Origin: Magallana gigas
Lineage: Eukaryota
Assembly (NCBI RefSeq): GCF_963853765.1
Contig: NC_088859.1
Span: forward strand, 21,824,001-21,888,000
Direction: 5' to 3'
DNA: 64,000 nt
The position numbers and the translations under genes were made by a program. Under the pieces are notes generated by a model. That model was given only the letters and a program-made list of their open reading frames with translations. It was not told where the DNA came from and made no database searches. Numbering within the stretch: position 1 is the first letter of the stretch; each line of letters begins with the position of its first letter. Below are positions 3,762 to 5,987 of this stretch, one piece after another.

Positions 3762-5987
3762 TCAAAGACGGAAGTCTTCGAAGACAAGACAGAGCCCGTC
3801 AAAGAGGGTCTCCATACTCCACAGAAATCGATACTAAAATACATGTAATTCAAAATCATAAACAGTGTATATAAATATAGGAAACAACTTTTCAAAGTAA
3901 GATCTACATATACACGTAGTTCCATTTCGAAAACTCCCGCCGTTTTTAAGAAAATACTAACACTGACAGACGTCAGCTGACTGTCGGCTGCTGAGTGCTC
4001 TAGCAGAATGCGCTTGCTGATGGTGGTTTGAGGCTCACATCGCTTTCTCTTGAGAGACCCCTTCAGGTGCTGCAAGTGAAATAGATGTATGTAAAAGAAA
4101 GTGGAATTCTGAACCATATGAATAAAATAAATGATACAACCAGCGGCATGTCAAAAAGAGATTTCGCGTGAAGTGTTAATTGATTTCATTTTATAATATT
4201 GAACAGGCCCTATACCAAATATACCTTTTTGTCCCCAGCCACTGGAGGATCCGACGCTTTGTCTTTGGTGGACACACCCCGTGTATCAGCGGGAGACTGA
4301 ACCACATCTTCTCTAGATGAGCAACGATTTGGCCTTGCTTTGCCCTGGGTTTTCTCCGTACCAGTGAGGGGGTCCGACTGGGTCTCTTTGCATGGTACGT
4401 CATACGTAGTAGGCACCGTCGCCGGCTCATGTGTACCGGAAGTCGCCGTCTTCATGGTGGTCAGAGAGGCAGAGTTAGTTTTTGCAGTCTCAGGCACGCG
4501 CACCTCAGCCGAGAGTACGGTGTTGGTGGTCGGGGCGGAGGACTTGGTCACTGACGTCACGACTGTCTGGGGCGGACCACACTGTAAAGTTGTCAGTATA
4601 ACAGTTATGTATTATACATATACACTAGTATAGGACTATGTCAGTAGATATAACAAAAGAGAAGAATATACGTAATGGCGGCGTCATTACATTAATTGTA
4701 TACATATTAAGCATATGAAATAATATGCTACACGACCATGACCTACCTTGACCTTGGTCTGTAATGGCGGTACAGGTGTGACCTTTGTCTTCAATGGCGA
4801 TACTGGTGTGACCTTGTCCTGCGATGGCAATACTGGTGTGACCTTGGTCTGTAACTGCGGTACAGGTATGACCTTGTCGGGCTTGCCCCCGGGATTTCTC
4901 CCGTTCTCCTGTTCCTGTGCTTCGCCCCTGCGCCATACTTTGTTATAGGACCAGTTACGAGTTTTCTTTGGTTTGGTCTACAATGTACAGGACAATAAAA
5001 CCAAATATGGCTGATTTTCAAAACTAAAAACACATTGCACGATAACAGTGGGTATTTGATAAAACTAACCTCGTCATTCGTCGACTTTGGCGGTGTAACT
5101 GTCAACGACGAGACAACCGCTAACTGTTCCTTGAAATTCTGATCCAAAATAAAATCGAATTTGAATTAAGATATTACAGACTCTGTATACTGTCTGCGTT
5201 CTAGCATTATAGCATTGCTATTACGTTTTAACGGCGGATGACGATTTAAGTATAAAAACTCTTTTTAGAAAAATCAGCATTTAAAATTAACAATGCGAAT
5301 AATGATTAAAAAAATCTTATTGTTTAACAATAGTAGAGACTTTGTCTATGTTAATATACCGACCTCTTTCCTCCACACCCTGTCCCTCCTCCACACTCTG
5401 TTGTAGCGCCAGTCACGGGCTGTCTGGGGCGGACCACACTGTAATGATTTAGGCACTTAATTGTTAGAATGATAAATGGGGAAATTAAATAATCTTTTAT
5501 ATAAATGCAGCAAAAGAGAAGACTTAAACGTAATGCAGAAGTTATTAAATTAACTGTATACATATTCAACATATGAAATATATGCTACACGACCATGACC
5601 TACCTTGACCTTGGTCTTTGATTGCGGAACAGGTGTGACCTTGGTCTGTGATGGCGGTACTGGTGTGACCTTGTCGGGCTTGCCCCCGGGATATCTCCCG
5701 TTCTCCTGCTCCTGTGCTTCGCCCCTGCGCCATACTTTGTTATAGGACCAGTTGCGAGTTTTCTTTGGTTTGGTCTACAATATACAGGACAAAAAAAAAT
5801 CAAATATGGCTGATTTTCAAAACTAAAAATACATTGCACGAGAACAGTGGGTATTAAACATCCGAATGTTTTCAGATCGGGAGCTACAGACCTACAGCTA
5901 AATTTTAATAAAACTAACCTCGTCATTCGTCGACTTTGGCGAGGTAACTGTCAACGACGAGACAACAGCAAACTGTTCCTCGAAATT
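3762..5987 (-). CDS. Uncharacterised multi-exon protein, 383 aa traced, 5' end not found; duplicated exon cassette, Thr/Pro/Val-rich, basic C-terminus
   Basis: Eight GT-AG exons, all phase 0 with lengths divisible by 3: 5987-5919 (NFEEQFAVVSSLTVTSPKSTNDE), 5774-5604, 5438-5364, 5138-5070, 4977-4747, 4581-4225, 4069-3962 (HLKGSLKRKRCEPQ..), 3833-3762 (YRFLWSMETLFDGLCLVFEDFRL*). AATAAA on the minus strand at 3534-3539. Confidence 0.75.

What the first reader, a model, noticed from the sequence alone, without database searches (positions are those of the whole stretch)
3762..5987. Unannotatable gene built from a duplicated three-exon cassette carrying a recurrent R-x-W-x-Y-N-x-V-W-R-R motif
Seen: the six-frame track misses the real frame. 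Splicing eight phase-0 exons yields 383 aa in which RNWSYNKVWRR, RDWRYNRVWRR (followed by DRVWRK) and RNWSYNKVWRR recur three times in two different exon types, spaced by KVTPVP repeats and a Thr-rich tract, and ending with LKRKR and a hydrophobic tail. The motif is shared between exons with otherwise unrelated sequence, suggesting an older duplication under selection. I recognise no family with this motif. Inference: a disordered, probably nuclear scaffold presenting multiple aromatic/basic short linear motifs, expandable by symmetric-exon duplication.
Basis: partly seen in the sequence, partly recalled or inferred. Interest (0 to 1): 0.72.

Follow-up and report, generated by a model that had tools for sequence, protein, structure and literature searches.

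The report
Annotated oyster-only disordered protein gene
The eight spliced exons are real, but this Pacific oyster gene is already in RefSeq (LOC105347336) as an uncharacterised, oyster-restricted, basic and mostly disordered protein, one of five related genes on one chromosome that carry a conserved Trp/Arg motif in exons that are duplicated and skipped.

Summary
Observation confirmed. On the minus strand, eight AG/GT, phase-0 exons (5987-3762) splice to 383 aa containing RNWSYNKVWRR twice and RDWRYNRVWRR once.

"Unannotatable" is wrong. Five other RefSeq isoforms skip cassette exons. RNA-like contigs from two studies show the E1->E5 and E6->E7 splices.

The locus (3084-10563) has an 82-90% identical tandem copy about 11.5 kb away with the same exons. 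Outside exon 6, dN/dS between the copies is 0.25 (p=2.7e-4).

Three more paralogs lie on the same chromosome. A 23-33% identical C. virginica homolog keeps the motif, the N-terminus and a KRKR...KRxxL stretch. All 11 strict DNA matches to the motif in the 564-Mb genome fall in these five genes, against 0 for the control.

There is no Pfam, PDB or literature match. AlphaFold2 mean pLDDT is 39.7, with only a C-terminal helix.

Best reading: a taxon-restricted, probably nuclear, disordered protein whose motif number varies by exon skipping and copy number. Its function is inferred, not shown.

The parts
7626..7649 (-).
   Evidence: ATG followed after 8 codons by a gtaatg donor. It forms the first 8 residues of RefSeq isoforms P0011-P0016. 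The equivalent exon M-x-[KE]-R-R-I-K-R plus GT is found in paralogs B, L022 and L023, and as MNKRQIKR in C. virginica. The E0->E1 splice itself was not seen in my RNA contigs.
5919..5987 (-). E1, cassette exon type A (NFEEQFAVVSSLTVTSPKSTNDE), 69 nt, phase 0
   Evidence: Splice from 5919 to 4977 (E1->E5) seen in contigs of runs X1 and X2. AlphaFold2 gives a low-confidence short helix here.
5604..5774 (-). E2, motif exon class 1 (TKPKKT-RNWSYNKVWRR, then KVTPVP 30-nt repeats), 171 nt, phase 0
   Evidence: Conserved in paralog B. Zero depth in X1 and X2, where it is skipped.
5364..5438 (-). E3, motif exon class 2 (CGPPQTA-RDWRYNRVWRRDRVWRKE), 75 nt, phase 0
   Evidence: W-R-Y-N-R-V-W-R-R-D-R-V-W is invariant between M. 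gigas, C. angulata and C. virginica in alignment A1. Hit by the genome-wide pattern. No RNA joint was seen here.
5070..5138 (-). E4, second copy of cassette exon type A
   Evidence: The 5070->4977 joint appears in X3, but that junction sequence is identical to E1->E2 of paralog B over the E4/E1 side, so its attribution is ambiguous.
4747..4977 (-). E5, second copy of motif exon class 1, with 4.3 copies of the 30-nt KVTPVP repeat
   Evidence: Contigs X1-4 and X2-10 cover 4747-4928 and stop at the exon edge.
4225..4581 (-). E6, whose first 6 codons (CGPPQT) are homologous to the start of E3, followed by a Thr/Ser-rich fast-evolving tract
   Evidence: dN/dS about 0.96 against paralog B. Contigs cover 4225-4583, and the joint 4225|4066 leads to E7.
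3962..4069 (-). E7, basic KRKR ... SKRILL stretch (candidate bipartite nuclear localisation signal)
   Evidence: K339 R340 K341 R342 K351 R352 L355 are invariant in six family proteins. The E6->E7 splice is seen in X1 and X2, with the first codon CGG (Arg) instead of CAC. Arg is also the residue in the older RefSeq model P0004.
3762..3833 (-). E8, C-terminal helix YRFLWSMETLFDGLCLVFEDFRL plus the TGA stop
   Evidence: 0 non-synonymous and 2 synonymous changes against paralog B. LW[ST]xETL is kept in all five loci. It is the only segment with pLDDT of 50-73, a helix at 360-390. Five of the six RefSeq isoforms read on into intron 7 instead.
3588..3761 (-). 3' untranslated region (at least this far)
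   Evidence: Contig X1 record 1 covers 3588-3776 without differences.
6296..6764 (.). MITE-like insertion in intron 1, polymorphic
   Evidence: 35-nt terminal inverted repeats at 6296-6330 and 6730-6764. The joint 6295->6763 (TA..TA) in X1 and X2 shows alleles without it, and depth over it is very high.
3084..10563 (.). Segment that is tandemly duplicated, holding this gene plus the upstream intronless gene
   Evidence: blastn against the 20 kb upstream of the window gives 82-90% identity to window coordinates -8378..147. Paralog B has all eight exons and intact splice sites.

Best explanation
This is Magallana (Crassostrea) gigas gene LOC105347336.

**Shown here**
- It belongs to a family of at least five genes, all on the same chromosome.
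- Family proteins were found only in M. gigas, C. angulata and C. virginica.
- All members share the same ordered modules:
  - N-terminus M-x-K-R-R-I-K-R.
  - 1-3 cassettes made of an NFxEQLAxVSSLT exon and a TKPxKxR-x-W-x-x-N-[RK]-V-W-R-[RK] exon.
  - A G-P-x-x-x-R-x-W-R-Y-N-R-[VI]-W-R-R-D-x-V-W exon.
  - A long, fast-evolving Ser/Thr-rich exon.
  - A KRKR...KRxxL exon.
  - A C-terminal LWSxETL helix.
- All cassette exons are phase 0 and a multiple of 3 nt. Their number therefore changes without breaking the frame, by tandem duplication (2 cassettes here, 3 in an older assembly's model) and by exon skipping (RefSeq isoforms, plus the E1->E5 splice in RNA-like contigs).

**Inferred**
- The protein is an intracellular, probably nuclear, intrinsically disordered basic protein.
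- Its conserved Trp/Arg motifs act as short docking or 'sticker' elements for a partner protein or nucleic acid. The proline- and threonine-rich stretches act as spacers. The number of stickers is tuned by splicing and copy number.
For: - **Gene identity:** P0014 equals MMKRRIKR plus the 383-aa model.
- **Splicing:** joints 5919->4977 and 4225->4066, with GT..AG on the minus strand, appear in contigs from two studies.
- **Coding constraint:** paralog B keeps all ORFs and splice sites, with only in-frame length changes. dS of 0.09 is close to the intron divergence of 0.08. dN/dS is 0.25 outside E6 (14 non-synonymous against 16 synonymous changes, binomial p=2.7e-4).
- **Motif age and specificity:** E2 and E3 motif DNA is 25/36 identical, with 5 of 7 synonymous sites changed. 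The motif is invariant in C. virginica. There are 11 genome-wide pattern hits, all in the five loci, against 0 for the control.
- **Family architecture:**
- **Disorder and charge:** mean pLDDT is 39.7, with 360 of 391 residues below 50 and only helix 360-390 at moderate confidence. pI is 10.0, GRAVY is -0.95, and no segment reaches transmembrane-level hydrophobicity.
- **No known domain:**
Against: - No experiment or localisation data exist, and no paper mentions the gene or motif.
- The nuclear assignment rests only on basic clusters.
Depth is 2-10 in contigs of runs only guessed to be RNA. There were no reads on the exons in the roughly 1% sample of a poly(A) raw run.
- No joints were seen for E0->E1, E1->E2, E2->E3, E3->E4 or E7->E8. 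Contigs in X1 and X2 run unspliced from E1 upstream to at least 6968, so intron 1 is retained in them.
- Low pLDDT from a 6-sequence alignment is weak evidence of disorder.
- E6 evolves neutrally (dN/dS about 1).
Confidence: 0.5

Rival explanations
1. It is a secreted, O-glycosylated mucin or proteoglycan-like protein, as the automatic RefSeq names suggest (mucin-4, mucin-5AC, proteoglycan 4).
For: RefSeq names. The protein has Thr/Ser/Pro-rich tracts and a 10-residue KVTPVP tandem repeat.
Against: The N-terminus MMKRRIKR is strongly basic, with no hydrophobic signal sequence. The maximum Kyte-Doolittle score over a 19-residue window is 0.96, and that peak is at the C-terminus. No mucin, SEA, vWD, SMB or hemopexin domain is found in Pfam. 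The S/T-rich part is only about 120 aa. The names vary between isoforms of the same gene, which is typical of low-complexity matches.
Confidence: 0.05
2. It is a precursor that is cut at its flanking basic residues to release several cationic Trp/Arg-rich peptides, for example antimicrobial peptides. More cassettes would give more peptides.
For: The motifs are short, Trp/Arg-rich, repeated, and flanked by KK/RR pairs. Trp/Arg-rich antimicrobial peptides are an established class (my own knowledge).
Against: There is no signal peptide. The conserved N-terminal, KRKR and C-terminal helix modules have no role in such a precursor. Nothing here shows processing.
Confidence: 0.05
3. It is an intracellular disordered protein with a non-nuclear role, for example cytoskeletal or a cell-cycle regulated substrate. 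The conserved KRxxL would then act as a destruction-box-like degron, and the TPPK/SPxK sites as CDK sites.
For: R-x-x-L directly after the KRKR cluster is invariant (K351 R352 L355). One or two full [ST]-P-x-[KR] sites occur per protein.
Against: Both are very short, low-information patterns that occur often by chance. No cell-cycle expression data were examined.
Confidence: 0.15
4. It is a young, largely non-functional transcribed locus. The open frame and repeats would be kept by recent duplication and gene conversion rather than by selection on a protein.
For: E6 and E7 have dN/dS of about 0.9-1.0. Expression is low and introns are retained in contigs. Most RefSeq isoforms carry an intron-derived C-terminus.
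Against: dN/dS is 0.25 outside E6, with p=2.7e-4. The modules are conserved at 23-33% overall identity in C. virginica and in distant paralog P0017. Splice sites and frame are kept in five loci.
Confidence: 0.07

Closest known systems
RefSeq LOC105347336 of Magallana (Crassostrea) gigas, isoform X3, XP_065923446.1 (auto-named 'proteoglycan 4 isoform X3')
   Same: Identical.
   Different: It adds the first exon MMKRRIKR. RefSeq lists five more isoforms that skip cassette exons and/or retain intron 7. No function is assigned, and the name is an artefact of composition.
Paralogs and orthologs of the same unnamed oyster family: P0009 (tandem copy B), P0017 (C7:16.31 Mb, auto-named 'TRIO and F-actin-binding protein-like'), loci at C7:17.83 and 22.26 Mb, C. 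angulata LOC128165938, C. virginica LOC144625298
   Same: Same order of modules and the same R-x-W-x-x-N-[RK]-[VI]-W-R-[RK] motif. They also share the KRKR...KRxxL stretch and the C-terminal LWSxETL helix, except in the C. virginica model.
   Different: Cassette number differs, with 1-3 first-class motif exons. In the distant paralogs and in C. virginica the class-2 motif exon occurs once before the S/T exon or twice. In gene A and copy B the class-2 exon is embedded between two cassettes, and the start of E6 is a copy of the start of E3.
Multivalent intrinsically disordered proteins with 'sticker and spacer' architecture, and exon-shuffled repeat proteins built from symmetric phase-0 exons (general classes)
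   Same: Short conserved aromatic/basic islands sit in fast-evolving low-complexity sequence. The repeat number is changed by in-frame exon duplication and skipping.
   Different: This is a resemblance in design only. No condensate, binding partner or localisation has been shown, and the motif matches no catalogued short linear motif that I could test here.

Membership tests
Oyster LOC105347336 family (unnamed, defined here) | N-terminal exon M-x-[KE]-R-[RQ]-I-K-R ending at a phase-0 GT donor | tested here: met
   Window 7649-7626. Also present in copies B, L022 and L023 and in C. virginica.
Oyster LOC105347336 family (unnamed, defined here) | One or more R-x-W-x-x-N-[RK]-[VI]-W-R-[RK] motifs in separate phase-0 exons | tested here: met
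   Three copies in the window gene. The motif is family-specific in the genome, with 11 hits against 0 for the control.
Oyster LOC105347336 family (unnamed, defined here) | KRKR...KRxxL exon followed by a C-terminal LW[ST]xETL helix exon | tested here: met
   E7 and E8. Helix 360-390 in the model.
Mucins / proteoglycan 4 (RefSeq automatic names) | N-terminal signal peptide for secretion | tested here: not met
   The N-terminus is MMKRRIKRNFEEQ. No hydrophobic stretch was found, and the maximum KD(19) of 0.96 is at residue 371. No dedicated signal-peptide predictor was available.
Mucins / proteoglycan 4 (RefSeq automatic names) | Characteristic domains (vWD, SEA, cysteine knot; SMB and hemopexin for PRG4) flanking very long PTS repeats | tested here: not met
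   Pfam finds 0 families at E<=1 for P0014, P0015, P0009, P0007 and P0017.
C19orf84 (Pfam PF17703) | Score above Pfam's gathering threshold (40 bits) | tested here: not met
   It appears only in the C. angulata ortholog, at 16.5 bits and E=0.0071, over the proline-rich repeat. I treat it as a composition match.
Intrinsically disordered protein (class, not a family) | No stable fold over most of the length | tested here: inconclusive
   AlphaFold2 mean pLDDT is 39.7 and pTM 0.15, with 360 of 391 residues below 50. The alignment has only 6 sequences. The composition (T, K, P, V, S, R; GRAVY -0.95) agrees.
Nuclear proteins with classical basic localisation signals | A functional mono- or bipartite NLS, and nuclear localisation | not testable with these tools
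   Only the invariant KRKR-x(8)-KR pattern and the basic N-terminus can be shown. No localisation data exist.

The most novel reading that the evidence does not exclude
The R-x-W-x-x-N-R-V-W-R-R element may be a previously undescribed short linear motif. In its longer form, W-x5-W-x5-W, arginines lie between the tryptophans. It would bind a defined nuclear partner or nucleic acid, or drive cation-pi self-association. Oysters would then tune its valency from 1 to 5 copies per protein by skipping and duplicating symmetric exons. That would make this a natural 'adjustable-valency' disordered protein family.
Probability: 0.2. Interest if true: 0.55.

Novelty: new member of a known kind. Interest (0 to 1): 0.27.

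Why it matters
**As a gene model, it adds little.** RefSeq already has this exact protein, so the headline "unannotatable gene" is refuted.

- A family-level description. Five clustered oyster genes and a C. virginica homolog share a genome-unique Trp/Arg motif and four other conserved islands in otherwise fast-evolving, disordered sequence.
- Evidence that the motif-bearing symmetric exons vary in number, by tandem duplication and by alternative splicing.
- A correction to likely mis-annotations. The names "mucin-4", "proteoglycan 4" and "TRIO and F-actin-binding protein-like" are composition artefacts. The conserved C-terminus is exon 8, not the retained-intron tail that most isoforms carry.

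**If the motif has a specific partner,** the family would be a tidy natural system for studying valency control in disordered proteins. That remains speculative.

Tried and rejected
- **Long 5' ORF:** I asked whether the 246-codon ORF at 10154-9414 was the missing 5' exon. It is not. It is a separate intronless gene with its own ATG (10070) and stop.
- **Exon 6 protein search:** this returned only three genomic ORF fragments from Logan assemblies, 80-84% identical.
- **Exon 5 against 1.84 billion representatives:** this found the gene's own cluster plus two low-complexity repeat proteins, P0005 and P0006, which I reject as relatives.
- **Curated families and solved structures:** Pfam on eight family proteins, and a PDB profile search, found nothing. 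The one exception is a sub-threshold C19orf84 match over proline repeats, which I reject.
- **ESM Atlas:** it holds the sequence but gave no usable neighbour and no model.
- **Literature:** searches for gene and protein accessions and motif strings found 0 papers.
- **Raw poly(A) RNA run X20:** no reads fell on the exons in the roughly 1% of the run that was read, so strand, transcript ends and most junctions could not be checked.
- **E4->E5 joint in X3:** it cannot be assigned, because its E4 side is identical to E1 of paralog B.
- **Known short motifs:** I compared the motif by eye with PP1 RVxF, APIM, MyPhoNE and calcineurin motifs, from my own knowledge. None fits.
- **Neighbour gene:** I checked whether the upstream intronless gene accompanies the other family loci. 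It does so only in the A/B duplication.
- no fold search was run, because the model is too low in confidence to give meaningful matches. No complex prediction was run, because there is no candidate partner.
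Full report
**1. What is in the sequence**

The gene lies on the minus strand.

| Exon | Coordinates |
|---|---|
| E1 | 5987-5919 |
| E2 | 5774-5604 |
| E3 | 5438-5364 |
| E4 | 5138-5070 |
| E5 | 4977-4747 |
| E6 | 4581-4225 |
| E7 | 4069-3962 |
| E8 | 3833-3762 |

- Each exon is preceded by AG. E1-E7 are each followed by a GT donor, and E8 ends at the TGA stop. 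Each is a multiple of three bases.
- Spliced, they give 383 codons and a TGA stop.
- RNWSYNKVWRR occurs in E2 and E5. RDWRYNRVWRR-DRVWRK occurs in E3.
- E2 and E5 carry a 30-nt (10-residue, KVTPVP-type) tandem repeat, 2.3 and 4.3 copies.
- E6 is Thr/Ser-rich, E7 has LKRKR, and E8 is a hydrophobic/acidic tail.

**2. It is an annotated gene**

- A phmmer search of exon 5 against 1.84 billion representatives found one real hit, a 407-aa protein.
- Its cluster holds RefSeq proteins of Magallana (Crassostrea) gigas LOC105347336, isoforms X1-X6.
- They lie on a record of 53,672,946 bp, which is the length of the window's own contig.
- The missing first coding exon is at 7649-7626: an ATG, eight codons, then a gtaatg donor.

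Decomposing the six isoforms into exon peptides gives the following, where i7 is read-through into intron 7:

| Isoform | Exon path |
|---|---|
| X1 | E0-E1-E2-E3-E4-E5-E6-E7-i7 |
| X2 | as X1, without E1 |
| X3 | full, with E8 |
| X4 | E0-E4-E5... |
| X5 | E0-E1-E5... |
| X6 | E0-E5... |

The title word "unannotatable" is therefore refuted. The automatic names (mucin-4, mucin-5AC, proteoglycan 4) differ between isoforms of the same gene. No domain supports them.

**3. RNA evidence obtained here**

- Contigs of two runs from different studies (X1, X2; only guessed to be RNA) carry the joint 5919->4977. This is E1 spliced straight to E5, with GT..AG on the minus strand. E2-E4 have zero depth in these runs. 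This matches isoform X5.
- The same runs carry the E6->E7 joint (4225|4066-4069). Its first E7 codon reads CGG (Arg) rather than CAC (His). Arg is also the residue in the older RefSeq model P0004, so this is an allele.
- Contigs covering 4225-4583 and 4747-4928 stop at the E6 and E5 edges with short unlaid overhangs. That is consistent with an E5->E6 splice.
- Run X3 shows 5070->4977 (E4->E5). That junction's E4 side is identical to E1 of paralog B, so I do not count it.
- No joints were listed for E0->E1, E1->E2, E2->E3, E3->E4 or E7->E8.
- The X1 and X2 contigs continue unspliced from E1 upstream to at least 6968, so intron 1 is retained in them.
- The poly(A) raw-read run gave no reads on the exons in the roughly 1% that was sampled.

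Transcription and part of the splicing are thus supported independently of RefSeq. The full isoform X3 path is not.

**4. Duplications**

There are three layers.

- **(a) The KVTPVP 30-nt array.** It varies in copy number between exons and between copies.
- **(b) The internal cassette.**
  - The region from 5190 to about 4560 repeats at 6039 to about 5417, introns included.
  - E2 and E5 differ at 3 of their first 105 nt, and E1 and E4 at 5 of 69.
  - E6 begins with the same six codons (CGPPQT) and the same upstream intron as E3, then diverges. E6 therefore looks like a fusion of the start of an E3 copy with the Ser/Thr exon. This is an inference and from the paralog P0017, where the class-2 motif exon is followed directly by the Ser/Thr exon.
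- **(c) The whole locus.**
  - Window 3084-10563 is 82-90% identical to a tandem copy about 11.5 kb downstream in transcription sense, at window coordinates -8378..147.
  - That copy (B, RefSeq P0009) has all eight exons, all splice sites, and only in-frame length differences.
  - The cassette duplication is therefore older than the A/B duplication.
  - An older-assembly RefSeq model (P0007, 480 aa) has three cassettes and five motifs. This suggests copy-number polymorphism or assembly differences.

**5. Selection**

Comparing copy A with copy B:

| Measure | Value |
|---|---|
| dS | 0.092 |
| Intron divergence | 0.081 |
| dN/dS, whole gene | 0.43 |
| dN/dS, E6 | about 0.96 |
| dN/dS, all other exons | 0.25 |

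- The value of 0.25 rests on 14 non-synonymous and 16 synonymous changes, on 588 and 173 sites respectively (one-sided binomial p=2.7e-4).
- E8 has 0 non-synonymous and 2 synonymous changes.
- Between the two cassette copies, pN is 0.043 against a pS of 0.08-0.15. The intron pair E2-E3 and E5-E6 differs at 26% of sites.
- The motif in E3 against E2 is 25/36 identical in DNA, with 5 of about 7 synonymous sites changed. The two motif classes are therefore old, and the peptide has been conserved.

**6. The family**

- A profile of the first hits found a third M. gigas protein, P0017 (401 aa, 30% identical, auto-named "TRIO and F-actin-binding protein-like").
- Six-frame searches of the genome found five loci, all on contig C7: 16.311-16.315 Mb, 17.828-17.832 Mb, 21.816-21.818 Mb (B), the window gene, and 22.259-22.261 Mb.
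- All have the same module order: N-terminal exon, NFxEQLA exon, class-1 motif exon (1-3 times), class-2 motif exon RRWRYNRIWRRDFVW, Ser/Thr exon, KRKR...KRxxL exon, and C-terminal LWSxETL exon.
- The N-terminal exon was not found by my pattern at 22.26 Mb.
- C. angulata has an 80-87% identical ortholog.
- C. virginica LOC144625298 is 23-33% identical. It keeps MNKRQIKR, two RNWRYNR[VI]WRRDRVW motifs and KRKR...NKRFLL.
- A degenerate DNA pattern for W-x-x-N-R-[VI]-W-R-[RK] finds 11 sites in 564 Mb. All are in these five loci, and the reversed control finds 0.
- No relative outside Crassostrea/Magallana appeared. Sensitivity was limited, however, and other mollusc genomes could not be searched directly.

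**7. Properties and likely mechanism**

- The protein has pI 10.0 and GRAVY -0.95. Its main residues are T, K, P, V, S and R.
- Seven of its eight tryptophans lie in the motifs.
- There is no transmembrane-grade hydrophobic segment and no hydrophobic N-terminus.
- AlphaFold2 on the six-sequence family alignment gives mean pLDDT 39.7 and pTM 0.15, with 360 of 391 residues below 50. Only a C-terminal helix (360-390, pLDDT 53-73) and two weak short helices on the NFxEQ exons appear.
- Pfam, PDB sequence profiles, the ESM Atlas and the literature give nothing.

Putting this together:

- **Shown:** a taxon-restricted, basic, largely unstructured protein with five conserved islands and modular symmetric exons.
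- **Inferred:** it is intracellular and probably nuclear, from the invariant KRKR-x8-KR and the basic N-terminus. The Trp/Arg motifs are the functional contact elements. Their number per molecule is set by exon skipping and by cassette copy number.

Conservation also argues that E8, and not the retained-intron tail used in five of the six RefSeq isoforms, is the functional C-terminus.

**8. Rivals**

- **Secreted mucin-like protein:** there is no signal peptide and no supporting domains.
- **Precursor of cationic Trp/Arg peptides:** there is no signal peptide, and the conserved non-motif modules would be unexplained.
- **Non-nuclear or cell-cycle regulated disordered protein:** this is possible, but rests only on low-information patterns.
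- **Decaying young locus:** this is contradicted by dN/dS and by conservation in C. virginica.

**9. Verdict**

- The gene is already annotated.
- The interpretation as a disordered carrier of multiple motifs, built from symmetric exons, is reasonable and partly supported. Its function remains inferred.
- The finding is an ordinary kind of thing: a lineage-specific disordered gene family in a bivalve genome, with a distinctive motif that is undescribed as far as my searches reach.
- Interest is low to moderate.

Noticed in passing
window 6296-6764: A MITE-like element sits in intron 1, with 35-nt terminal inverted repeats and TA flanks. Contigs of runs X1 and X2 join 6295 to 6763, so those alleles lack the insertion. 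Depth over the element is hundreds to thousands of times that of the gene, so it belongs to an abundant, transcribed repeat family.
   Followed up: partly
window 9414-10070 (minus strand), and L012 9010-9663: An intronless 218-aa acidic ORF ends with basic KRRK-type clusters, with a TATA-like box about 60 nt upstream. It is co-duplicated with the gene studied here (92.7% amino-acid identity to its copy). It is not found next to the other three family loci. There is no Pfam match, only a chance-level Bac_DnaA_C hit. The scan has already noted it separately (s1-381048).
   Followed up: partly
L014 (Logan contig of SRR6063434, 2286 bp): This genomic contig covers E6-E8 and is only 87-89% identical to both copy A and copy B. 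It could be a third haplotype, a further copy, or a closely related species. ORFs and exon edges are kept.
   Followed up: partly
P0007 (older C. gigas RefSeq model, 480 aa) versus window 3762-7649: The older assembly's model of the same gene has three cassettes and five motifs, against two cassettes and three motifs here. P0004 has one more KVTPVP unit in E2. This suggests copy-number polymorphism of cassette and repeat between individuals.
   Followed up: no
window 7770-7860 (minus strand): A promoter-like stretch lies about 120-200 nt upstream of the E0 start codon. It holds a palindromic TGACGTCA (CRE-like) site and an ATTGGCCAA (CCAAT-type) element. It falls inside a block that is 85% conserved with paralog B.
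   Followed up: no
G000:C7 16.31, 17.83 and 22.26 Mb (L022, L023, L024): Three more members of the family lie on the same chromosome, 0.4-5.5 Mb from the window. They have different numbers of class-1 motif exons (3, 2 and 1 found by pattern). The C-terminal exon at 22.26 Mb ends differently (LWSVETLMELTALFGF, then a stop).
   Followed up: partly
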